A stretch of DNA of 63,722 bases, the filler included, from Choristocarpus tenellus KU-1152 (lineage: Eukaryota > Protista > Phaeophyceae): the NCBI GenBank assembly GCA_964200185.2. It is 11 parts of 11 records of this genome, joined end to end, with 100 filler letters (N's around TTAATTAATTAA, not from the genome) between each part and the next. Parts side by side here need not be neighbours in the genome. Positions count along the whole stretch, not along the records: positions 29,018 to 38,350 come from CAXNAD020003769.1; 10 more parts are not named here. One strand, given 5' to 3'. The position numbers were made by a program, and so were the translations under genes. Below the pieces are notes generated by a model that saw only the letters and a list, made by a program, of their open reading frames with translations, ran no database searches and was not told the DNA's origin. Positions 2,945 to 39,718 of the stretch are shown here, piece by piece (the stretch's first letter is position 1; each line of letters starts with the position of its first letter).

Positions 2945-3322
2945 CTAGGAGAGAGATTTTGAGGGCAGAGAGCAAAGTCATGGATGTGTGAGGATCTGCT
3001 GTACATCCAAAGGTCACAAAAGAACTTTAAAATCCCCAATCTTGTTGGTCTGCTGCTACCCAGTCGGGTACATACCTACCATTTATTACAACTCTGCTCA
3101 GAGTTACGGGCTATGCACCACATGTGACTGGGGTTTCCACTTGTGTGGTATTCTCACAAGAACATGTCCTCCCCACTCAAGCGTTTAACACCCACAACAC
3201 ACAACCCCCCCCCTCAGTACCCCTCATTTCTCCTTCCACAACAGATTGCTACTGTGACAAACTTTCTCACCACATTTCCCACATAAGTTCTGGACTTAGA
3301 TGAAGACATGGGATCAAGCTGA

Positions 3323-3415
3323 GACCCAAAGTATCTGGGGGGGGGGGGGGATCTGCACCAGGGTGTCCATTTGGGCCGTAACCAGGAAAAGTGCACTTAC
3401 ATTATACATCCGGCG
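3323..3415 (+). mobile_element. MITE family A, left half, cut by the contig end
   Basis: GACCCAAAGTATCT-polyG-...GTGTCCATTTGGG...AAAAGTGCACTTACATTA aligns with 4320-4498. Confidence 0.85.
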
Positions 3416-4319: not shown

Positions 4320-4498
4320 GACCCAAGGTATCTGGGGGAGGGGGGGGGTCCACACCTGGGTGTCCATTTGGGTCAAAATAAGGAAAAGCGCATTTACATG
4401 ATCCATCGGACATATGAAACCAAATCACCAAAAAAACGTGATATGAAAAAAGTGACCCCAAATGGACAGCCGCCACCCCCCTCCAGATACTTTGACCC
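4320..4498 (+). mobile_element. MITE family A, full length (~179 bp)
   Basis: TIRs CAAGGTATCT-polyG / polyC-AGATACTTTG with inverted subterminal GTCCATTTGGG / CCCAAATGGAC. Confidence 0.9.
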
Positions 4499-5879
4499 GG
4501 ACTACTCTAAATTTCCAACAAGATATACTGAGCAGCATCGATGTTGTAACAGTAACATTGGTCATACACAAGGGAAAAAAAATATGTTACTAAATGCAAA
4601 CACTGAATCAAGGGAAACTGTAACATTTAAGGTGTGGCACTACCGATTACTAGTATATCCATTCGGGAAAAAGCACTAACACCAGTGGTCCTCAAGATTG
4701 CCTCTCTGCATAACAGGGTACAGCTTCTTCACCCACTCTTTGAGTGTCAAGGAAGGGATACAACCGACTGTCTAGACCGCATGGTATCACCTTGTGATCC
4801 AATGGGCACAAAAAGTAAAGTCGTATCTATTTTCTTACCCATCCTTTGGCACGGTTCACTACCCTCTGACTTCATCTCTTGAAACAGTTATCAACAGCAG
4901 CAGTCTGTCTCTCCTCGACACAAACCTGTGCGAGACTAGGAAATTGGTAGCCCTTAGCTCGCATGGCATTGAGCTTCACCAAGATTCCCTTAACAGTTTT
5001 TGACATCCTATCAAAACGTTATCAAAATGTTGCTCCAATGACTCTTTCCTCTCTATGACTGCATCCTCTCCCTCTACGATTCTTGGATCATGTTTCCACC
5101 TCCAGAAAAGAAGCCCCAGGTACTGATCCTTGAACAGCACCTCTAGTATCTTTGACAACTCCAACTTACAACCAATAGCGGTATCCGAATATTGCTGACC
5201 CATCACATGAAACTCAATACAAGCCTCGCTGTTCAGCGTAGTCCCACGGCGCAGGTACAACAGTACCTTGGGCCCCCCCATTCTAAGTGAAGCTCCATAC
5301 CTCCAGCACACATGGAGCGGCATACCAGCACGTTCTATGTTCAGCGACCTATTAGCAGTCTAAGTAAACCTGCTAGAAAATTGGATTAGAAATCAAGAAG
5401 AATCTCCCGTTGCTTGACTGTCATCGAGAATTGAAGGGCAACGAGCGACAGACACGATACCAAATCCATCAGTTCCTGTTCTCTGTTTGCAATTTTCTTC
5501 TCAACCTATGACCTGAAACACCATGAAAACAACCAACCTGCCATCTAAGATGATTCCAACCTGCTATTCGCCGTCCCCATGACCACCCGTGAACGAGGAC
5601 AACCACACGCCCCAGGACGACAACAAACGAAATTTATACAAAATCTACGTGTTGGCTTTACCCCTTTCTTGGTAAGTGGTAATAATCTATTATCAATGAG
5701 TAGTGAGTTGATAGGTAATGTATGGTTAAAATTAACCCCTGAAAGATTAATTGGAAAGACGAAAAAATATATACAAAAAAATAATCTGTCCATTCTTCAA
5801 ACTCTCTACAAACACCTCACCTCTCCAACCAAACTTTCAAAATCCAGAACTTTTCACTTACCCAGCAAATTAAAAAAAG

Positions 5880-6210
5880 TCCCGTCCACTGCCCAGACCA
5901 GTCCGACAATAATCTAACATGTACTAGTCCATGTTCACTAGGTATTAAACTGGTCCATGCACACCCTCTGGTCCAGGCCGAACATGCTCTGACATGTCCG
6001 GACCATGTCGAATGGGTATTGTACCAGTCCATGTCCACCAGCAGGACTGCGTTCAGTATTCTCTAATATGTCCGGACCATGACCACTGCGTATTGTACCA
6101 GTCCATTTCCACCTGCCCCACAGTCTAACTTTTTTTCCTTGCGTGTCCAAACCATGGCCGTCCACCAGTTCAATTTCTTTCTGGCGTGTCCGGATCATAT
6201 CCACATGCTC
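5880..6210. repeat. Array of short degenerate motifs (GTCCGGACCATG / GTACCAGTCCAT), possibly a transposon subterminal region
   Basis: Repeated gtccggaccatg, gtaccagtccatgtccac and gtccggatcat variants across about 330 bp. Confidence 0.5.
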
Positions 6211-6779
6211 TACAAATCCAGCTCTCTATTTCATTTGGCCTTTCCATGCGAACAATGAAAATGTGTATGACATATTGAAGGATAACTTATGCTCCATTAT
6301 TTGCATATAGATAGCACCCTTTCAAATCATCTCCAGACCTCCTTGGTTCGAAATCATTAATAACATACACTTTTGATTAAATATTACTATACCCTCTGAA
6401 ATTTTGGAGATGTGTCAGGGAAAAAGCCAAACCAATATCACAAGTACTCCTGTAAAAGTTACAGTTGTCATAAATGTGAAAGATGCCTCTCTAAAATCTA
6501 TTTACGATTTGAATATCAGCTATACAACGAACACTCCCTTAAAGCTTGGAAATTACGATGTTATGTGTACATTGCTGCTATGCCTCGCCCTTACATAACT
6601 GGTTGACGAGATAGGGAAGCATCCTAAGAACCTGACAGGCCCCTCCTTGCCCAANNNNNNNNNNNNNNNNNNNNNNNNNNNNNNNNNNNNNNNNNNNNTT
6701 AATTAATTAANNNNNNNNNNNNNNNNNNNNNNNNNNNNNNNNNNNNNNNNNNNNTGGTATTCAGAGACATTTGGGCACC

Positions 6780-28917: not shown

Positions 28918-30145
28918 NNNNNNNNNNNNNNNNNNNNNNNNNNNNNNNNNNNNNNNNNNNNTTAATTAATTAANNNNNNNNNNNNNNNNNNNNNNNNNNN
29001 NNNNNNNNNNNNNNNNNCCCCTGCCCCAGCAACTTCATACTTGATCCTCCAGGGTATCTAGATGCTGCAGTACAGAGTTTTTTTGCAGTTGCTGCATCTG
29101 TAGGAACTATCTGGTGTTCCCTTGTCATAGTATATGGCACAACTCTTTTCTACTAGTGTACATCACGGGTTGTGTATTGACTGACCAGGCGTCGCAGATG
29201 GACGCTTGTTATCCACCAGAAATACTCCCCCTTCTGGAGGAGATGTCACCTTGTTCATAGCACATAGTATGGCGTGATTTATTGCAGTACTATATGTCAC
29301 CCTCAAGAGCTCTCACTGACTTTCCTCTACATAGTAGGCTATTTTAATCTTTGAATATACCCATAATTGCTGTTATTTTTGTTGTCACTCCGTTTTCTTG
29401 TACCATATTCCGCAAGGCCACGTAGATGGGACAAACTATGTACAATGATGCTAATTGTGTATACTAGATATGGCACTGTCGAAGGTACAGTGCTTGTCTG
29501 CACAACAGTATACTTTAGAGTCTGTAGCCCTCGGAACCCTAACCTTAACACTTTTGATTCTACTATGTTATTTTTTTTTGTTCGTGAGCAGCCCTTGACA
29601 TATGCTCAACCATGGACCTTTGTTGAAAGGTTTTGACAGACCGTACCATGCCATGCCATACCATACCATACCATACCCTGGAGGGTCACATCTGACTGGG
29701 TGCTATGCGCAGACTTGTTCCTGTTTCTTTTGGTGGGGTAGGTAGAGCCTGGCACTCATGGAGAATGTTGTTTAGCATGGCAGTTACACTGCACTTCTTG
29801 CAGGAGACCCATTTGTGTGGTGAATCAAAGTCGATCAATAAAAAATATATATATTTAAAGGGCTTGGAACATCTATGGTTGATGGTAGAATGGGAGGGCA
29901 CCAAATTCTGCCAGAACCTTGCTCCTTAGGTGGAAAGTAGTGCCAGATTTCAAGAGAGAAGGGGTATTTGGGACTGTTTTCTTGGCTTGTCGAGGTGAGG
30001 TTTGATTGGGGCACCCCCGTGATGATAGTGGGGAGAGTGTGAAGTGTTGAGAAGTTGAAAGTGAATGTAGCTTGGGTTGTTCTGAAATGTTTACTTTTGA
30101 ATAATGTTTTATAAATTGTATTCTGTTGGCTTGGAAGGGGGAATG

Positions 30146-30316
30146 AAGAAATATTTTACCTTGGCAGGCATTCTCAACATTTTCAATATGCTGAAGAGTA
30201 CAAAGAAGTATTCTACCTTGGCAGGTATTCTCAACATTTTCAGTATGCTGAAGAGTACAAAGAAGTATTCTACCTTGGCAGGCATTCTCAACATTTTCAA
30301 TAGGCCGAAGAGTACA
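30146..30316. repeat. Tandem repeat, 57 bp x3
   Basis: AAGAAGTATTCTACCTTGGCAGGCATTCTCAACATTTTCAATATGCTGAAGAGTACA three times. Confidence 0.9.
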
Positions 30317-30975
30317 ATCTGTTTCAATGATTACTCTTGCCCAAGGGGGCTCTTGGTCAATGCCAGTGTATTAATCCTGGCTACCTATGTTGCTACGCCC
30401 CCCGCTTATTGTCAGAGCAGATGCTTTCGATATGACTTGGTGGTGTAGTGCACTAGAAGGCGTTTTCAACACACTGGAGGCGAGGTCTCTCACTTGCTTT
30501 AGTTCATGTCAAGGATGGAACATGTATGTATCAAACCCATACTAAAAAATGAATTTCTCAGAAATGTGCCAATAGTGTGGAGGAACCCAAAAAGATACGT
30601 AAAAGTTTGAGGTAGGATGGACAGTCATGCAACTATCTACTTTAGGGGAACAGTGACATCTCAGTTCCTCACAAGGTACGAGAACGGTCTCCTCTACGGT
30701 GATTTGCCAGGCCTTATCTTGTACCACTTGCGCATTTGAGGTTTGGTATATGATGCTTAAGTTTTACCACTCCCTATTTTCTTCCAACAATGATTGAGAA
30801 TTGTGTAGTCGAAGGGGTTGCACATGCCTCTGAGATCCCCCCTCTTATATACTCTACTGCTGCAGAGGATGTTGTGACCTTGTTGTATGGGTCAACTCTC
30901 TCCTCAACGAATGGTGTCCCCTGGAATAACCCCTCTGCTTTTGCCATGCCTGTGATACTAGGTGTTTGCCTGCAG

Positions 30976-32092
30976 TGAAGTTGGGTGAGCTTTTGGATTT
31001 GTTATCTGATGGGACTGTGTCGAGTCAAACTGCAAAGATGGTTCTGCGTGTGATGGTGAAGGTAGGATTTTGTTTGTAATCTGGAACCAAATCGTTGTTT
31101 TGTTTTGTTTTTGTGTTGCACATCGCCTTCCTGATTATTTGTAAAGAGGCGGAAACTTGGTGGAAACTTCCACTTGCCCCGCCTCTTCCTTCTTGTTGCA
31201 TTCAATCCCCCACCCCAAGCCCCGTACAAATCCTGATTTGGTTTGTTGGTGTTCAAGGAGGACCTTGAGAATTCACCGCTCCAGATAGTGGATGCCAGAG
31301 GACTGCGGCAGATATCGGACAGGACAGAGATTGAGGATCTATGCCGTGGGATCGTTGAAGACCCAAAATATGCAGGGCAGGTATGAGGATACTTGCATCC
31401 CTTGCACGACTTGAACATGATTTTTTTAGGGGTAGGGGGTTAACTCTCTGATATAGTGTGCTTACAAAACACTTTTTTCTTTTCTTTTTTTCTGTAGAGC
31501 CAGTTACAACAAGGGATCGTGCGTGTCTGTTTTTTGTTTGCGTTGCCACATGGGGGGAGACGTATTTATTTGCTGTTGTGGACTGAAGGTCATTGGTGTG
31601 AGTTTCAAGTAGGGGTCCTGGTTGTTGTCAATATGAAGGATATGTTGTAGTTTATCTTTTTCTTTGGTGGTTATTTTTCTGAGTTATTTGCCTTCTTTGT
31701 GACCCTATGATGTAAGGGTCTCTAGAGTAGTTCTTTTTGTTTAACGTAGGATTAACTCAAAGTGTGGAGCACGCTTGAGTGGTTGGAGTTATTTTGAAAT
31801 ATAAGCACCCGCTACAATGCATATTTGGTTATGAATACTCATAGCACTCCATTGTATTCATTATTGATAGTGTTATCCAACTCACCCAGTCCAATTCCTT
31901 TCCCTTCACCACTGTGCTTTCGTCTTGCCGACATAGCTACTCAAGTACCGTGAGGGCAAGTCCAATTTGTCCAAGTTCTTCATGGGACAGGCCTTCAAGG
32001 CCACGCGAGGAAAGGCTGATGGCAGGATCGTGGAGGAGTGCATGATGCGCCTCTTGGGTCGCAGAGTAGGAGACAGGGAGGGTGGCAAATAG
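30976..32092 (+). CDS. GATB: Glu/Asp-tRNA amidotransferase subunit B (organellar GatB), 3' exons 30976-31061, 31258-31380, 31937-32092
   Basis: KLGELLDLLSDGTVSSQTAKMVLRVMVK|EDLENSPLQIVDARGLRQISDRTEIEDLCRGIVEDPKYAGQ|LLKYREGKSNLSKFFMGQAFKATRGKADG is the GatB helical/YqeY tail; splice phases consistent, stop at 32090-32092. Confidence 0.9.
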
Positions 32093-34123
32093 CTAAAGGA
32101 AGTCCCACCTTGGACAGGATCGGTGGGGCTATTTTTTGGTTACTATCCCGAGAAATATGTTGAGTGATGTTCATGGGCCTCATGAATGAAGGGTTCATAA
32201 AGTCATTACCGCCCTACCCACCCCCATCGGGTTGATCACGTACCTCTTATGTTCGTAACTGTTCTAATGGAGTTATTGTCATTTATATTATTGATGTGGG
32301 GTTGATGATCGGTTACATTTTCCCTTCCCCCTACTAAAATGTTTTGGTTAACTTATCTTCCATGTTGATGGCCCTGTTTCCTTGCGCTGTGGTTAACATA
32401 TTAGATGAGGTTGGTGTGGGCTGGAGTAGACATAGTAGAGTGTAACCTGGAAGCAAATGTCTACGCAAGAAAGTTGCTCCTCTCACAGTACTGGCTCTTT
32501 TGCTTGATTCCCTCTTTTTTTCTGTTGCATAGTCTTTGAACAGTCTGAAAATTATGAGTGTGGGAGAGGAGTGCTTTTTTGTTGTTGTGTAGCAGTGGTG
32601 GCGTCTTGGATTCACTAAACTCCCTTGGCTGAACAACATTGGGTTAGGGTTCCTGACTTTTCTTGATAGCACCACCGTACAATACAGTAGTGTAACCACC
32701 TTGTCTCAATGCAATGAATGGTTGGTGCAGGTGTAAAGTGGGGATCAATGAGATGTTGCATCACAGAAATGTGGCAGAGGATAAGCCAATTAACTCTACA
32801 GTGGCCTGGTCTCGAACTCGTGTTCTCCTACATTTTTCAAGAGGAACAATGGATTACACTTTTGGCAGACCTGTGAAGTCAGCACATATGAGGATTTTGT
32901 GTACTTGCAAGGTGAGGACAAATGGCAACGAGGGATGATATTGTGCTTTGCACAGAGCCATGTTTCCTCGTAAGAGAGGTCTGCATAGGAGGTCCTTGTA
33001 CAAAGTTCAGGAACCAAGCCAAATAGTACCTGACCTGGGCAAGCAAAAAGGGGTCTTGTGGGGAATGAATGGTGCCGTTTACCCGGCAACCTGGTAATTC
33101 GACTCATCTCTTAAAAGGGATAATTGGAGGGCACTGATATTTTTCTTGGGGTTTGCTTCTTGAAGACTTACTTTTTGACTTTACCCCTTCAATAATACCT
33201 TAGTATCAATGACACCCTCTCTCTCGTACCTTGTCATGTGCTCGGCAGGCAAAGATGACTTAGCAAAGAGCTAACTGCAACACAGCCAACCCCTCAAAAG
33301 CATAGCACTCCCTGCTTCAAGAACACATTTCTCAAAGGTGGTACACAATACTATCAACCTATCGTCTCACGACACGGAGTATGATTCCTCAACCAGGGTC
33401 ACCTCCAATGCACACACAAGCACGGACTGTCACAAACACAGACTGGGAACGATCTACACATCTTTTGCCTTCTACCTATTACACCCTCCTTCTCCTGACA
33501 CTGGTCTTCAGTGGGTCAAGCAACACTATGGTTAGCTCAGAGACATGGTAACACCATGCACCTAAAGCCTCTTTCGCCTCCGTCCATGGATATCATTAAA
33601 ATATAACATATGGTCAGCTCACATGTAATACAAAGTTCTCTTTGAGATAACTACAGGAAAATGCAGGGGAACAAGGACCAGCACTGTAGGACAATTAACA
33701 AAAGTATCGTCTTATGTGGACACACAACACACAGATATTTTGTCAAGAAACTGTAACAAAACACATACCCATACAAACCACAAATACACCCTATGTGGCC
33801 AAACTGACAAAATCAGAGTACACCAAAAAACAGAACAAGGGTATCAGAACCACAACAAATGTGCACGAACGAATATTGCTTCACATCAATTCCTACGGGG
33901 TGTTACAAAGGAGCAAAATTCTACCACCACTCACCTAGGTATGTGATTCCTACCTATACAAAAACTGCATTAAGGTTCATTTTGGTGTTACGCACAGTAT
34001 TTTATCCCTCACAGACAAGCAAAAAAATCACTGATCACTTCCTTCATTCAGCAATACAAGCAAGAAGCACGCATATGTGTCACCTCCCCCTTTCCCAACT
34101 TTACACAACAGTTCAATGTCTAC

Positions 34124-36934
34124 TTAGAAGCTTCCTGGGCACTGTCTGCCCATTGAACCCCCACCGCTGCGATGTCGTCGGTGACTTTCTTGCCGCCTTC
34201 CACTTTCACCACCAGGTCTGTGGTGATCCTCCTCAATAATTGGCACATGAAGTGAGCAAGGAGAGGAATTAAAATTCCCTGTCCTCAAAGGATCAGGATG
34301 CCTGAGTGGACCCACCGAACTAGCTAATGTAGCCCTGGCAGCACCAGGATGAAGACTGTCTGCCCCCCCTCTTCTTGTTGAGGTTGCTGTCCCCACTGCC
34401 CCCAGTCTTCCTGCTGCCACATCACCTTGTGACAAGAGAAAATCCTCCTTTGGTGTATTAGGGTGAAGGAAACGCAACCTATCAATTGATTGGATAAGGC
34501 TGTGGAGGTTCTTGTAATGTCTATCCTCATTCCTAGTGTTCCTAGCATGGAGACCATTATCGCCCACGCGCACAAGCACCTTGGACACTCTAGATTCTCC
34601 TGCAGCATAGTGCACAGCCAGTGCTTTGTGATGCGTAGTTGACAATCGGATCATAAAAGTGCCTTTTGCAGCAGTTTCCAGTTCCCTCTGTACATACTCT
34701 TTCAATAAGAAGCCCTTCAAGACCTGACGCTGCTTCCACATCTTAGTCTTGAAGAGTACCTTTATGGCATCCCACAACCATCCCCAGAATACCTTGAAGT
34801 GCGCATGGGGAATTGGAGCCAAAGACAAAGGACACATGTGAGTCTTTGCCACGACTGCAGGAGAAGTCACCCCCTTCCACAGGTCAGCATCCTGAGCAAA
34901 TGTATCGAAGTCTGACTCTGTCAAGGGGCGCTCCTTTGCCCCTGGTACCCGCTCACGGAAGTCCACTGCCAACCCCTTCCAGCAAAGCAAACCCCACGGA
35001 AGGCTGTCATCCCCTGCAGTTTCCCCCTTCCAAGACCCCAACCCACTGTGAGATTCAGCAGCAGCAGCAGTAGCAACTTGTCTCCACAAGTGCTGCAAGG
35101 CATCTGTTGAAGATTGATTTGGACTTGGAGGGGGAGGGGGAAGGGACTCCATGTACTCAGACATAATCTGTAATGCCAGCCAGCACAGGGAACAGTAAAA
35201 GGAGAAAAGGGAAGAAGGGAGTCAATTCACTGAATGGTTCTAAGTGAACCAAAATGTTTTCTTATTCCACTCTGGAGAAGTCAGTCATGAGCCGCAACAT
35301 TGCCCAGTTGGTCCCAAGAACATAGAGAACAGTTTCTCACTTCTCACCCTCACTCGAACAACGCCAAGGATAAGGGATGAATGATCCTTGGTAACAAATA
35401 TGGTTGAAAAGACCAAAAAGGTTGCAAAACCAGTGCATTCTATTTGACAAATGCACTAGGCATTTGATTGGTTGTTCCACAGAACTTTTTTTGTCCTTCT
35501 GAATTTCACCAACCACTCCACTCAGCAAGGGGACTGACAATAATTTAAAGAGGTGTCGGAGGAAACACCCAATCAACATCCCAACAGACATACACTCGCC
35601 TTTGGGATGAGCTCCTTGAGCACTTCCTTCTCATCCAGGAAGAGGTTTTTATCAGTTACCTTTGTCGAAAGCTGCTTTACGCAACCCGGGTGTCCCCGCA
35701 GCGCCTCCACAATTTTCCCCCTGGAAAATATCTCAAGGAGCTTATCTGCATCCAAGTCACCCTCTCCATCGGGGTTGAGCTCCTGCACTGTTAGCTTTCG
35801 AGCACAACACTTCACAAACAGCTTAGCCGTGCTGGATGGCAGAGTAGGAGTCGGGGGTGCAAGAGGAGGCATGAAGAAGGGGACAAAATCTGATTACTCA
35901 CAAGCTGCAAGTTGTGGTCTGGATTAATGACTATAGGTCTGTTGGGGGTGCAGGGAAGAGTTAGGGGGGTTCTCATGTGAGGTATGTTCTATCCTCTGAT
36001 TATCTAAACCCTAACACTATTTCTTGGCTATGCCAATCAAGTCATTGCCCTTACGTCTGCATGGCAGTTTCTCTATAAAACAGCAAAATACTACAGTTAC
36101 AGGCAACAAAAAATAAAATACACAAATGATTGATCCAATTACTGCATTATGTTCCGTGAAAATAGTTAATCCCACCCATGTCTAAGGGACAGGAATTGAT
36201 AGGCGTTCTCAGCACCAGATCCACCTCCATTTGACACCTTCTCATACCCAATATATGTACAGCATTCAACCAAAAAATGCGAGGACTTCTGATGAGATGT
36301 AAATAACATAATGGTAAGAAGCACGCATAAGCCCAAGGAATACATCAACATAGGATTGCTGGCCGGACCCAGAAGGACCCAGAGGCCCTTGTCATTTGTA
36401 AATGCGACAAAAACAGAACGCCAAGTAGGTATAGAGACAAAACAGCACAAAGCAGAGCATCACATGCCTGATAATTCAACACATAAAACACTCACAAGTA
36501 TTTACACACAATACACACGAGAAGTATATATAAAACTAAACAAAGGAACAACTGCATGTGTAAGAATAGCTAAGCACCCAACCCGCACAAACTTGCTTCC
36601 ACACAACTTCAATGTTCCCTCTAATATAAACTTGAGAACATGCACACCTGATCTTTTTCAGCCCCTTCACCTCCACCACCTCTCCTGTCAACCTTGCAGG
36701 TGGGCATGACTTTGTTCCCTTCATTGTTACCACAGCTCTCAGCTGAGGTACATCTCGCAACAGTTTCTGTAAGAAGTCATAGAGCCATACCCTCTGGTCC
36801 CCAATGAGAAGACCTTCCACACACCCATCAAGTACCAGAAGAGGTTTTCGTGACAGATGACGATTGACATGTCTTGCAATCTCATCCACCACTTTGTCAT
36901 CATGGGCTGGGAGGGACTTCAGTCCAAAGCCATT
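34124..36934 (-). CDS. STAND/NB-ARC-like NTPase fused to a STAT-type linker + SH2 domain, 5' part missing. Exons 36934-36648, 35831-35600 (or 35594), 35167-34124
   Basis: Walker B-like PLLVLDGC, sensor-1-like LRAVVT, VVEVKGL...TAKLFVKCC and GxP motif LRGHP; then STAT linker LPWGLLC...RPLTESDF...FWGWLWDAIKVL and SH2 GFLLKE...GTFMIRLS...LRFLHPNTPKEDF. Confidence 0.82.
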
Positions 36935-39718
36935 CTGTAGAGATGGTTGGGGTACGTGAGACGTGAGACGTGAGATTTACACCAGAGAAGTCAACACAGA
37001 CTAGGAGATGGTCTAATGTAGGGTTTGGTGGTGGTCAATGTTTCAATTAATGTTAAAATCCTGCTTGGCCTGCTGTAGCCTATCATGCACTGGTATTACC
37101 ATTACCTATGATATATTGTAGGAGGGGATTGATGGACAACATCATGAATTGATGCAGAGATCCTAGAGGTTGCATTGAAAAACGCCTATCATGCCAATTA
37201 CTCTATAGTACTATTTTGCATTGGACTACAAAATGCACACTCTAAATGACCACAAAACTGTCTACAGTAATGGTGAAATGCAAGATGACTTATTTCACTT
37301 ACAGTGTACTTGAAAAAAATGAAGTAATAAAGAATCAGACACTTCAAAACAGTTCAGTCAAAAACGCTACATGCAACACAACATTTAAATTTGCATGGAT
37401 CTTCACTGGACCAGCTGACCAGACTAGGGCTGTCGGCTAGCCTGGAACCTGGTAAAATATCTGGCAGCCCTGGATTGGTAGACTTCTTTGATTCAATTTG
37501 CAGTTTGATAGCACACCATAATATCAAAAATATGTAATGTAGAATGATTATGATATCAAACAGCACTCTAGGATTTTTTTTGTTTCCTTACAGTTAATCA
37601 TTGAATGCAAGGCTGCAACATTTTTGGAAGCATGTACAGAAATATATATACCCGAATTCACAGTGCATGTATGGTATTATACTATTGATATTACACAAGG
37701 GAGTTAACTTTCCTACCCACATATACGTAACGCAATACTAATACCATTCACGTAAGCACATGATTGTCAAGAGTCTAGTTTGAACACAAGTTAGTGCGAG
37801 TGGTGACTGTTTCAAAATAGAGCTTTCTAATACTTTGGAAGGTGACTTCATCTTATCACATGAGAGTTTCATTAGGGTGTTGAAAATCTTTACTAGATTT
37901 TCAACAGCTCAAACTATTCACAATTCAAACCTATTCATACCTGACAAATCCTGGAAATTAGATTTCCTCAAGTGTACGCTTCTGTATGCCTTTGAAACAT
38001 GGGAGCGCAGCATTGGATCAATTCACAATAGTGAACAACAAGTGCGCTGTAACAAGTGTTTTCTGATGGGAAGCAGCCAGACTTTTTTAGAGGACAAAAC
38101 AGCAACAGAGTTTGTTAACCAGTTACCAAATACACCTCTTGCCCATGCACACCCTGTCAATTTCTAGTGAGCAGACATGCAAATGTAACCAACCTGGCAA
38201 CTCTGCCAAACAAAGTGTCATTTCCTCACACCACCAACAGCCTGCCACCAGAGACACTCACCATTATTGAGGAGGGGGAGAGGGGGGGCGCATGGTATCC
38301 ACAAGCAACAATTTTTCCACACTGCACCCCACTGCACAACGTAGTGTCCCNNNNNNNNNNNNNNNNNNNNNNNNNNNNNNNNNNNNNNNNNNNNTTAATT
38401 AATTAANNNNNNNNNNNNNNNNNNNNNNNNNNNNNNNNNNNNNNNNNNNNACAGGACAAAGTGAGGTGAAAGGGAGGAGGGGGGGGGGAGGGGGGGGGGG
38501 GGGTGGGGGGGGTAGGGACAACGTATTATTAAATACTAGTGTTAGGTCCAAGCATAGTACTTATAGTACGCCTTGAAAGAAATACAAACGTGTAACAGCG
38601 CAAGGGTATTTTCAACATCAGTCAAATCATCACACCATGCAGTTTCACCAATAGCAAGAAAGCCATCAGACGTACACACTTATTGGATGTACCCCACACT
38701 CCCAACGGACACGCCTCATCCAATAAATAAAAAACATCATCCGTTTGTATTGCCTCAGAAAGTAAGCACACAAAAGAAAAAAGACCTCATCACGATCAAC
38801 AGGATGTGAGAACTGTCACTCGGTGCCAAAATAATAAAAATTAAAATACACAAAATGTTAAAGAATTTTAAAAAAGCATTAGTCTTAACAAAAACACCAA
38901 TTAAACACTAAAAGAAAATCATCCCATCTTACAAAGTCCACTAGAGTTGAAAACTTGCATGCACAGAAGAAGTATCAGTCTTGAAACATGCTTCTCAACA
39001 GAGGATGCATTTACTTTTCCAAAACATACACTACGGTAACACCAAAAAATGATAATATTTCCCCATTTACCCTCCACTACAAAAACTAACCAAGGACTAC
39101 TATTGACAGAACCACTGTGAAAGAGAGTAGGAGGTGCACTTCTCAATGCACGGAGGACCGTAAAAAATGTTTTTTCTTTTCCCTTTCTGTGCAGGCCCAT
39201 CTAAGCCCAGACACACATGCTAAGTATGTTTTTTCTTTTCCCTCGCTGTCCAGACCCATCTAAGCCCAGACACACATGCTAAGTACACAAATCTTATCAG
39301 GAGACAAACACACATACACGTACACATCTTGCAATATGCACTCATTCATATACCGAGCATGCAAGCATTGGTCCAAACACAAAACACTCAAGCCCTCTAC
39401 ATATCTACACTCTCTTCTCTAGTACGGTTAGCATACATACATGCATACATCCATACCATGCAGGTAGGACAAGGATTCCTATCTGTTCAACTCTGAGACC
39501 CACCAGACACTCACTCACTATCATTACTACTCAATTCTTAGGGCTAAGGGATTTGAAATGTCTTACAACAGCACTCAGGTGACGGGGTATTAACTTCCTG
39601 TCTCTAATGTGTGCGCTCATTAGAAAATAACAAAAAAACATAGAACATAAGCATATAGATATAGATGTAGATACATCTTGAATAGCAATACAGTTCCATT
39701 GAACTCTAGAAAAAAACT

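What the first reader, a model, noticed from the sequence alone, without database searches (positions are those of the whole stretch)
34124..36934. NLR-like STAND ATPase with a STAT-type linker-SH2 in the sensor position
Seen: three exons on one contig splice in phase into one protein. The first two carry STAND/NB-ARC hallmarks in the right order (Walker B PLLVLDGC, LRAVVT, VEVKGL..TAKLF, GHP). After a proline-rich hinge the last exon (about 35002-34440) follows the STAT linker plus SH2 closely: LPWGLLC...F...RPLTESDF..FAQ, FWGWL...IKVL...W...GFLLKE, GTFMIRLS and LRFLHPNTPKEDF. Known: STATs have VPW..L...L...F...RGLT, FW.W, GF..K, GTFLLRFS and YLYP.IPK; STAND proteins normally carry a C-terminal repeat sensor (LRR, TPR, WD40). 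Seen: the phosphotyrosine-binding Arg and Lys are kept, there is no STAT DNA-binding domain between the two parts, and the tail after the SH2 has no Tyr. Inference: this is not a transcription factor but may be a phosphotyrosine-gated oligomerising switch, a candidate immune or cell-death receptor. I know of no characterised protein with this layout. Walker A and any N-terminal effector domain are not visible because the contig ends at 38350.
Basis: partly seen in the sequence, partly recalled or inferred. Interest (0 to 1): 0.85.

Follow-up and report, generated by a model that had tools for sequence, protein, structure and literature searches.

The report
Protease–ATPase switch with STAT-type SH2
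This brown-alga gene is an expressed member of an undescribed stramenopile protein family that joins a caspase-like protease and an Apaf-1/NLR-type ATPase switch to the phosphotyrosine-reading module of STAT proteins, a layout that could tie phosphorylation signalling to a cell-death-type machine.

Summary
The piece is a whole 9333-bp contig of Choristocarpus tenellus, a brown alga. Three minus-strand exons (36934-36648, 35831-35600, 35167-34124) are joined in RNA-like contigs. Those contigs also splice exon 1 to a further exon that lies off the contig.

- **Collinear homology:** each exon matches full-length relatives in order. Those relatives carry a CHAT caspase-like protease (His/Cys kept), a P-loop STAND ATPase and a STAT-type linker-SH2.
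- **SH2 end:** a family profile hits only STATs first (E 6e-27 to 3e-18, linker plus SH2). A confident model of the window's own sequence (pLDDT 93.5) matches STAT linker-SH2 structures.
- **ATPase:** its profile hits NRC1, ZAR1, Sr35 and Apaf-1 (E 1e-7 to 1e-5).
- **Not a STAT:** there is no DNA-binding domain and no tail tyrosine.
- **Range:** the family occurs across oomycetes and ochrophyte algae. Its nearest non-SH2 kin are prokaryotic CHAT-NB-ARC-TPR proteins.

No paper describing the layout was found. Phosphotyrosine gating of oligomerisation and protease firing is inference, not shown.

The parts
36935..38350 (-). 3' part of the intron upstream of exon 1 (acceptor AG at 36936-36935). 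The preceding exon lies beyond the contig end.
   Evidence: No coding frame or Walker A here. An X2 contig joins 36936 to 28 letters found nowhere in the window. In frame they read ERGDARLWLE|NGFGL, which matches Ectocarpus P0151 DACNWLEQGFQL.
36648..36934 (-). Exon 1 on this contig: second half of the P-loop ATPase core. It holds Walker B LLVLDGC (36841-36821), RAVVTMK (36739-36719) and VVEVKGL (36679-36659).
   Evidence: Aligns to P0015 414-458 (E 2e-8), P0013 211-298 and P0151 473-572 (E 7e-10). RNA-like depth in X2 is about 1290 against 46 in the intron.
35832..36647 (-). Intron, 816 nt, GT..AG
   Evidence: X2 joint 35831->36648, depth 1070. Dinucleotides checked.
35600..35831 (-). Exon 2: helical domain that follows the ATPase core (ARC1-like). 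It holds TAKLFVK (35830-35810) and the GxP motif RGHPGC (35698-35681).
   Evidence: Aligns to P0015 480-554 (E 1e-12). The GHP column is nearly invariant in the family.
35168..35599 (-). Intron, 432 nt, GC..AG (non-canonical donor)
   Evidence: X2 joint 35167->35600, depth 884. The same junction is used by the annotated product P0001.
35105..35167 (-). Proline-rich hinge (IMSEYMESLPPPPPSPNQSST) between the ATPase module and the STAT-type module
   Evidence: Sequence. The equivalent stretch is disordered in the model of P0013.
34790..35104 (-). STAT-type linker domain (DALQHLW ... LPWGLLC ... ERPLTESDF ...)
   Evidence: Profile A3 aligns to the linker plus SH2 of STAT6, STAT5, STAT3 and STAT1. 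The model is helical here and superposes on STAT linker domains.
34439..34789 (-). SH2 domain (FWGWLW ... GFLLKE ... GTFMIRLS ... LHPNTPKEDF), with the phosphate-binding Arg (in GTFMIRLS) and Lys (in GFLLKE) kept
   Evidence: Pfam SH2 E 0.0036, below the cut-off for this sequence alone. All ten single-sequence hits in solved structures are STATs. The Arg column is at least 90% conserved. Model pLDDT is 93.5.
34124..34438 (-). Low-complexity C-terminal tail (104 residues, no Tyr) and stop codon (34126-34124)
   Evidence: The tail is not conserved in relatives.
31713..34123 (-). Probable long 3' UTR. The lower end is approximate and inferred.
   Evidence: X2 record 2 is 3457 nt long at depth 794. 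It starts at 35169 and has 2287 nt left beyond 34000. I did not lay reads on this part.

Best explanation
**Shown.** This is the 3' two-thirds of an expressed Choristocarpus tenellus gene. It belongs to a stramenopile family with the following layout:
- an N-terminal CHAT caspase-like cysteine protease;
- a STAND P-loop ATPase (NB-ARC/NACHT-like core plus helical domain);
- a flexible hinge;
- a STAT-type linker domain plus SH2.

The window holds Walker B, the helical GxP domain, the hinge, the linker-SH2 and a tail. The protease and Walker A exons lie beyond the contig end.

**Inferred mechanism.** The SH2 sits where other STAND proteins carry TPR, LRR or WD40 sensors, and it keeps a STAT-like phosphotyrosine pocket. 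Binding of a phosphorylated partner, for example a phosphorylated receptor-like kinase, would release or concentrate the protein. Nucleotide-dependent oligomerisation of the ATPase module would then bring the CHAT domains together and switch on proteolysis, as Apaf-1 does for caspase-9. The output would be a proteolytic signal, most plausibly stress, defence or cell death.

My confidence in the identity and architecture is above 0.9. The figure given here applies to the mechanism.
For: **One transcript.** Both junctions and a further upstream exon are seen in RNA-like contigs. The exons are collinear with full-length relatives.

**Architecture in relatives.**
- Pfam finds CHAT, NACHT/AAA_16/NB-ARC and SH2 in P0012, P0014, P0015, P0017, P0027 and P0155. 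NACHT in P0155 scores 48 bits, above the cut-off.
- Motifs are conserved in about 50 oomycete orthologues: CHAT LHFSGHG and VFVSACHS, Walker A GxxGIGKT, Walker B LLxLDGC, GHP, FWxWF and GTFLLRFS.
- They are also present in brown-alga orthologues.

**Solved-structure profile hits.**
- STATs at 6e-27 to 3e-18, against 1e-10 for ordinary SH2 domains.
- NB-ARC and Apaf-1 at 1.6e-7 to 1e-5.
- A CHAT protein at 1.4e-13.

**Folds.**

**Sensor position.** The nearest non-SH2 relatives (P0082, P0084, P0085; E 1e-87 to 1e-79) are CHAT-NB-ARC-TPR proteins, so the SH2 occupies the place of their TPR sensor.

**Tyrosine phosphorylation is plausible in the lineage.** Phytophthora has two putative tyrosine kinases, many TKL kinases and only four SH2 proteins (PMC3019232).
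Against: - No binding, nucleotide, oligomerisation or protease data exist.
- The Choristocarpus 5' exons were not recovered, so its own protease and P-loop are unseen.
- The winged-helix domain that locks other STAND proteins in the off state seems absent, so regulation may differ from Apaf-1 and NLRs.
- Walker B is followed by Gly rather than a second acidic residue, so hydrolysis may be weak.
- Stramenopiles have few tyrosine kinases.
- The family is low-copy and conserved rather than diversified, which fits a housekeeping signal better than a pathogen receptor.
- The Ascophyllum paralogue P0073 lacks the CHAT His/Cys motifs.
Confidence: 0.5

Rival explanations
1. The protein is the same, but the SH2 is a docking or substrate-targeting module rather than the sensor. 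It would tether the protease-ATPase to phosphorylated complexes or substrates. Activation would be set by something else, such as nucleotide state, the hinge or a partner.
For: STAT SH2 domains first dock on phosphorylated receptors (established knowledge). The hinge between ATPase and SH2 is long and disordered, with low inter-domain confidence (pTM 0.54), which suits a tether. The family is conserved and low-copy.
Against: In the closest relatives the same position holds TPR repeats. In characterised STAND proteins those repeats are the regulatory sensor (established knowledge).
Confidence: 0.22
2. The SH2-like module does not read phosphotyrosine. It would bind phospho-Ser/Thr (as the Spt6 SH2 does) or an unphosphorylated surface. 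It could even act as an intramolecular lock that replaces the missing winged-helix domain.
For: Canonical tyrosine kinases are scarce in stramenopiles. The winged helix is absent. The window's own SH2 scores below Pfam's cut-off.
Against: The STAT pocket signature is kept almost letter for letter: GTFLLRFSE in oomycetes, GTFMIRLS here, with the Arg at least 90% conserved and Lys in GFxxK. Similarity to STATs far exceeds similarity to other SH2 types.
Confidence: 0.15
3. The Choristocarpus copy is a truncated or decaying paralogue that lacks a working protease or P-loop and has little or no function. The architecture would then be real only in other species.
For: The contig ends before the 5' exons. 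The 5' part was not found in protein searches. A brown-alga paralogue (P0073) has lost the CHAT catalytic motifs.
Against: The frames are open, with conserved motifs in all three exons. RNA-like contig depth over the exons is several hundred or more, against tens to about 120 in the introns, and splicing is precise. A further upstream exon's translation matches the orthologue's ATPase domain.
Confidence: 0.06

Closest known systems
Apaf-1 / CED-4 / plant CC-NLRs (NB-ARC clade of STAND ATPases)
   Same: P-loop core with FVGR...GxxGIGKT, Walker B hhhhD, a helical domain with a GxP motif (GHPG against GLPL), an effector at the N-terminus and a regulatory domain at the C-terminus. These are the best sequence-profile and fold matches.
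   Different: No winged-helix or MHD-type domain was detected. Walker B is followed by Gly. The effector is a covalently fused CHAT protease rather than a CARD, CC or TIR adaptor. The C-terminal domain is an SH2, not WD40 or LRR. Pfam scores straddle NACHT and NB-ARC.
STAT transcription factors (Dictyostelium STATa, STAT1-6) and plant STAT-type SH2 proteins (Arabidopsis SHA/SHB)
   Same: The linker domain plus SH2 forms one unit, with FWxW, GF.SK, GTFLLRFS and P..PK signatures and the same fold (TM by query 0.71-0.73 to STAT clusters, 0.64 to Arabidopsis SHB).
   Different: There is no N-domain, coiled coil or DNA-binding domain, and no tyrosine after the SH2 for reciprocal dimerisation. It is therefore not a STAT. 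Only the module is shared.
Prokaryotic CHAT-NB-ARC-TPR proteins (P0082, P0084, P0085; P0082 sits on a methanogen-like contig)
   Same: These are the closest relatives of the N-terminal two-thirds (E 1e-87 to 1e-79, about 30% identity). They have the same CHAT Cys motif (VFVSACHS in P0082 and P0085), GxPGIGKT, LLVLDNC/A and GHP.
   Different: They keep a winged-helix-like stretch and TPR repeats after the helical domain. The stramenopile family has a hinge plus STAT linker-SH2 there. The direction and timing of any gene transfer were not tested.
Brown-alga NB-ARC-TPR candidate receptors (Ectocarpus; Zambounis et al., as cited in PMC4053784)
   Same: STAND ATPases of brown algae proposed as immune receptors.
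   Different: Those carry TPR sensors and form variable families. This gene has CHAT and SH2 domains and belongs to a conserved low-copy family.

Membership tests
STAND ATPase (NB-ARC/NACHT type) | Walker A P-loop GxxxxGK[ST] | tested here: inconclusive
   Not on this contig in any frame. It is present upstream on the same strand in Discosporangium (GRKGIGKT, L001:1324-1404), in the Ectocarpus orthologue P0151 (GQKGIGKT) and in nearly all family members long enough to include it. An upstream exon exists in RNA.
STAND ATPase (NB-ARC/NACHT type) | Walker B hhhhD, and a conserved strand after it | tested here: met
   LLVLDGC at 36841-36821 and RAVVTMK at 36739-36719, aligned to LLVLDGC / LLVTM in P0015.
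STAND ATPase (NB-ARC/NACHT type) | Helical domain with a GxP (GLPL-like) motif after the core | tested here: met
   RGHPGC at 35698-35681. The column is nearly invariant, and HMMER aligns it to GLPLAI of NRC1.
STAND ATPase (NB-ARC/NACHT type) | Significant profile or fold similarity to solved STAND modules | tested here: met
   NRC1 1.6e-7, ZAR1 2.4e-6, Sr35 2.2e-6, Apaf-1 1.2e-5. Foldseek finds Apaf-1, NRC3, NRC1, ZAR1, PH0952 and CED-4. P0155 passes Pfam's NACHT cut-off.
STAND ATPase (NB-ARC/NACHT type) | Winged-helix domain (ARC2/WHD) after the helical domain | tested here: not met
   Only about 15 residues separate the end of the helical domain from the Pro-rich hinge here. The model of P0013 goes from the helical domain to one long helix, then disorder, then the STAT linker. 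The prokaryotic relatives do have the extra stretch.
STAT | Linker domain plus SH2 as one unit | tested here: met
STAT | DNA-binding domain, coiled coil and N-domain | tested here: not met
   No STAT_bind, STAT_alpha or STAT_int hits in the window or in any full-length relative. An ATPase and a hinge precede the linker.
STAT | Tyrosine phosphorylation site shortly after the SH2 | tested here: not met
   The 104-residue tail has no Tyr. Oomycete members end about 10 residues after the SH2.
SH2 domain | Phosphate-binding Arg in the FLxR strand, and a basic residue in helix A | tested here: met
   GTFMIRLS and GFLLKE. The Arg column is at least 90% conserved. Pfam SH2 scores 17.8 bits for the window alone, below the 21-bit cut-off, but 40.8 bits in P0012.
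CHAT / caspase-like protease | Catalytic His and Cys (HxxGHG ... SACxS) | tested here: inconclusive
   Not on this contig. Present in Ectocarpus P0151 (VHFTGHG, VFLSSCHS), Scytosiphon P0152 and about 50 oomycete orthologues. Profile hit to the solved CHAT protein 8tl0 at 1.4e-13.

The most novel reading that the evidence does not exclude
A stramenopile-wide, phosphotyrosine-triggered apoptosome-like machine. Engagement of the STAT-type SH2 by a phosphorylated partner would drive nucleotide-dependent assembly of the ATPase module and fire the fused CHAT protease, giving phosphorylation-controlled cell death or defence in oomycetes and brown algae. It would have arisen by fusing a prokaryote-type CHAT-NB-ARC conflict module to the ancient eukaryotic STAT linker-SH2 in place of its TPR sensor.
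Probability: 0.3. Interest if true: 0.9.

Novelty: new variant of a known kind. Interest (0 to 1): 0.74.

Why it matters
STAND ATPases such as Apaf-1, NLRs and bacterial Avs/NACHT proteins are the main switch behind regulated cell death and innate immunity. Their known sensors are repeat domains. SH2 domains are the classic readers of tyrosine phosphorylation and are best known from animals and amoebae.

A conserved protein that wires a STAT-type SH2 to a STAND ATPase and a caspase-like protease would be a direct link between phospho-signalling and an apoptosome-like device. It occurs in a lineage (oomycete pathogens, brown seaweeds) where tyrosine phosphorylation and programmed cell death are both poorly understood.

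It also gives a handle on two further questions. One is the origin of the STAT linker-SH2 module. The other is how prokaryotic conflict modules were reused in eukaryotes. The parts are easy to test: peptide binding, nucleotide binding, oligomerisation, protease assays and knock-outs in tractable oomycetes or Ectocarpus.

Tried and rejected
- **Single-exon family scans:** Pfam and NCBIfam gave nothing for exons 1 and 2, and SH2 only below the cut-off for exon 3. Single-exon comparison with solved structures gave nothing meaningful for exon 1.
- **Upstream sequence:** no Walker A or other coding frame in the 1.4 kb upstream.
- **Wasted search:** The search for homologous proteins with P0015 alone returned only itself.
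- **Choristocarpus 5' half:** searching with a CHAT+ATPase profile found Ectocarpus, Scytosiphon, Phaeothamnion and unnamed algal assemblies, but no Choristocarpus protein.
- **STAT transcription factor reading:** rejected, because there is no DNA-binding domain, coiled coil or tail tyrosine.
- **Generic AAA+/ORC reading:** considered, since ORC and p97 appear in Foldseek. It is less likely, because sequence profiles rank NB-ARC proteins first and the GxP motif is present.
- **PADLOC:** only a weak SAVED_CHAT hit for P0014 and TPR hits for the prokaryotic relatives.
- **Rest of the contig:** no Pfam match for other ORFs and no Rfam family.
- **Literature:** two SH2-evolution papers (Liu et al. 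2011; Liu and Nash 2012, recalled from memory) are not held, so I cannot rule out a passing mention there.
- **Joined spliced protein:** not typed or searched. Exons were searched apart by reference, and where a joined sequence was needed I used the database record P0001.
- **Other limits:** No complex prediction was run, because no specific binding claim rests on it.
Full report
**Source and gene model.** The piece 29018-38350 is a complete 9333-bp contig of the brown alga Choristocarpus tenellus (assembly GCA_964200185.2, contig CAXNAD020003769.1). I fixed the boundaries by reading the sequence:
- exon 1, 36934-36648, ends in phase 2 (AG + C = Ser);
- exon 2, 35831-35600;
- exon 3, 35167-34124, including the stop.

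**Transcript evidence.** Three public runs of one study hold the stretch. Laid on 34000-38350, run X1 spans it in one piece, as DNA would, and is probably the source.

Run X2 behaves like RNA. Its contig depth is about 730-1300 over the three exons and 12-119 in the gaps. Its library type is not on record, so this is my reading of the depth pattern and joints. X2 contains contigs that skip exactly 36647-35832 (GT..AG) and 35599-35168 (GC..AG). Both junctions are therefore real, and the second intron uses a GC donor. The annotated 450-aa product P0001 uses the same junctions.

X2 also has a contig that runs from exon 1 across the acceptor at 36936/36935 into 28 letters found nowhere in the window. 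In frame these read ERGDARLWLE before NGFGL, which matches DACNWLEQGFQL at the same place in the Ectocarpus orthologue P0151. So the gene continues upstream of the contig, still inside the ATPase domain. The Met at which P0001 starts is an annotation artefact.

**Relatives.** An exhaustive search with exon 3 found 28 proteins. Besides P0001 there were short brown-alga models holding only the SH2 exon (Discosporangium, Ectocarpus). There were also long proteins of 580-960 aa in which the match lies at the C-terminus. In these, Pfam finds CHAT, then NACHT/AAA_16/NB-ARC, then SH2.

Each window exon aligns collinearly to them:
- exon 1 to P0015 414-458 (E 2e-8);
- exon 2 to P0015 480-554 (E 1e-12);
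- exon 3 to P0015 662-904.

A profile of seven full-length members retrieved about 60 more. They come from Saprolegnia, Achlya, Thraustotheca, Aphanomyces, Lagenidium, Pythium, Globisporangium, Phytophthora, Peronospora, the brown alga Ascophyllum, Chrysoparadoxa and uncultured eukaryotes. Their only names are 'SH2 domain-containing' or 'CHAT domain-containing' protein. Most species show one locus, so the family looks low-copy.

**Brown-alga orthologues.** On the Discosporangium contig L001 the exons lie in the same order on one strand:
- a Walker A exon (ILGRKGIGKTQV, 1324-1404);
- a Walker B exon (3109-3348);
- a GHPG exon (4446-4577);
- the SH2 exon (5957-6586).

In Ectocarpus, P0151 (718 aa, partial) carries CHAT His (VHFTGHG) and Cys (VFLSSCHS), GQKGIGKT, ILVLDGC and GHPGC. 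It ends in QETASDALEVLWSEV. The same letters begin P0003, the representative of the 90%-identity cluster that holds the Ectocarpus SH2-exon model P0029.

**The STAT-type module.**
- Alone, exon 3 scores below Pfam's SH2 cut-off, yet its ten hits among solved structures are all STATs.
- A 33-sequence profile headed by the window's sequence hits STAT6, STAT5A/B, STAT3, Dictyostelium STATa, STAT2 and STAT1 at E 6e-27 to 3e-18, over both linker and SH2. The next hits, ordinary SH2 domains, start at 1e-10 and cover the SH2 only.
- The model of the window's residues (34427-35041) is confident (pLDDT 93.5, pTM 0.87).
- Its 33 best Foldseek matches are STATs over about 210 columns.
- In the ESM Atlas it matches STAT clusters at TM 0.71-0.73 and Arabidopsis SH2 protein B at 0.64.
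- The phosphate-binding Arg (GTFMIRLS) and the helix-A Lys (GFLLKE) are kept, and the Arg column is at least 90% conserved.
- There is no DNA-binding domain, and the 104-residue tail has no Tyr.

It shares a module with STATs but is not a STAT.

**The ATPase.** A profile of the module (18 sequences, including P0001) hits NRC1 (1.6e-7), NRC2, At5g66900, Sr35, ZAR1, Apaf-1 (1.2e-5), NRC4, RPP1, DARK and NLRP1. The model of P0013 125-660 (pLDDT 82.9) shows a P-loop core and a helical domain. Its best Foldseek matches include Apaf-1, NRC3, NRC1, Sr35, ZAR1, the archaeal STAND protein PH0952 and CED-4, with STAT6 for the C-terminal half.

Two departures stand out. After the helical domain the model shows one long helix, a disordered hinge and then the STAT linker, with no winged-helix domain. 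The prokaryotic relatives have an extra stretch there. Also, Walker B is followed by Gly rather than an acidic residue.

**Nearest relatives without an SH2.** P0082, P0084 and P0085 (E 1e-87 to 1e-79 against the family profile) are CHAT-NB-ARC-TPR proteins. P0082 lies on a prokaryotic contig beside methanogenesis-type genes (MTD, MtrH). This places the SH2 where these relatives have their TPR sensor. It also hints that the CHAT-ATPase module is of prokaryotic type, but I did not test direction or timing.

**Mechanism.** The architecture and the conservation of catalytic and binding residues are shown. The rest is inferred from what is established for Apaf-1, NLRs and STATs.

A phosphorylated ligand would bind the SH2. 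The ATPase module would then assemble, and the fused CHAT proteases would be activated by proximity. Phytophthora has two putative tyrosine kinases, 139 TKL kinases (many of them membrane-spanning) and only four SH2 proteins (PMC3019232), so a phosphotyrosine input is plausible but unproven.

The low copy number and deep conservation argue for an endogenous signalling or death switch rather than a diversified pathogen receptor. Three rivals remain open: an SH2 that acts as a tether, an SH2 that does not read phosphotyrosine, and a decayed copy in this species.

**Novelty.** No paper in the library holds CHAT, SH2, STAND, caspase and NTPase together, or CHAT domain, NB-ARC, SH2 and eukaryote together. 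Searches on SH2 in oomycetes, stramenopiles and Ectocarpus gave only passing mentions. Two SH2-evolution papers are not held.

The proteins are in public databases under automatic names. What is new is therefore the recognition of the architecture and its range, not the sequences. I rate it a new variant of a known kind: a STAND switch with a new sensor-position domain.

**Limits.**
- The joined spliced protein was not typed or searched. Exons were handled by reference, and P0001 stood in where a joined sequence was needed.
- The 3' UTR length and the RNA nature of run X2 are inferences.

Noticed in passing
window 35168-35599: The second intron uses a GC donor (GC..AG). This is confirmed by the RNA-like joint and by the annotated product. 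A GT six bases downstream is not used.
   Followed up: yes
window ~31713-34123: The RNA-like contig that covers the last exon is 3457 nt long and runs on for about 2.3 kb below 34000. This implies a 3' UTR of about 2.4 kb.
   Followed up: partly
window 30146-30317 and 29640-29677: Three tandem copies of a 57-bp unit (93% alike) and a short (ACCAT)n run lie downstream of the gene. No function was found, and the ORF over the repeat has no family match.
   Followed up: partly
window 35153-35155 (Tyr in IMSEYMES): Many family members have a Tyr 5-15 residues after the IP[KS] motif that ends the helical domain: SEYME here, PYAYP in Ectocarpus, MYAAV in Chrysoparadoxa, NDYCPLLPY in Saprolegniales. 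Phytophthora lacks it. It could be a phospho-site for the SH2, but that is pure speculation.
   Followed up: partly
P0073 (Ascophyllum nodosum, 765 aa): This brown-alga paralogue, 24% identical to the window's product, keeps Walker A/B, GHP and the SH2. It lacks the CHAT His and Cys motifs, so its protease may be dead.
   Followed up: partly
L003:8001-10697 (ENA ERZ27252234 k141_758355): The closest non-SH2 relative (CHAT-NB-ARC-TPR, P0082) sits in a prokaryotic contig between uvrC and a formate-dehydrogenase-like gene, near MTD and MtrH. The host therefore looks like a methanogen-type archaeon.
   Followed up: partly
L005, L007, L008, L009: In four contigs from one metagenome and three unnamed algal assemblies (GCA_0244496xx/0244498xx), the CHAT-ATPase(-SH2) gene is followed by a HOOK-domain gene on the opposite strand. 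The neighbourhood is conserved.
   Followed up: no
family-wide: Walker B reads LLxLDGC in nearly all eukaryotic members and LLVLDNC/A in the prokaryotic relatives. There is no second acidic residue directly after the Asp, which is closer to the NACHT pattern than to NB-ARC DDVW.
   Followed up: partly
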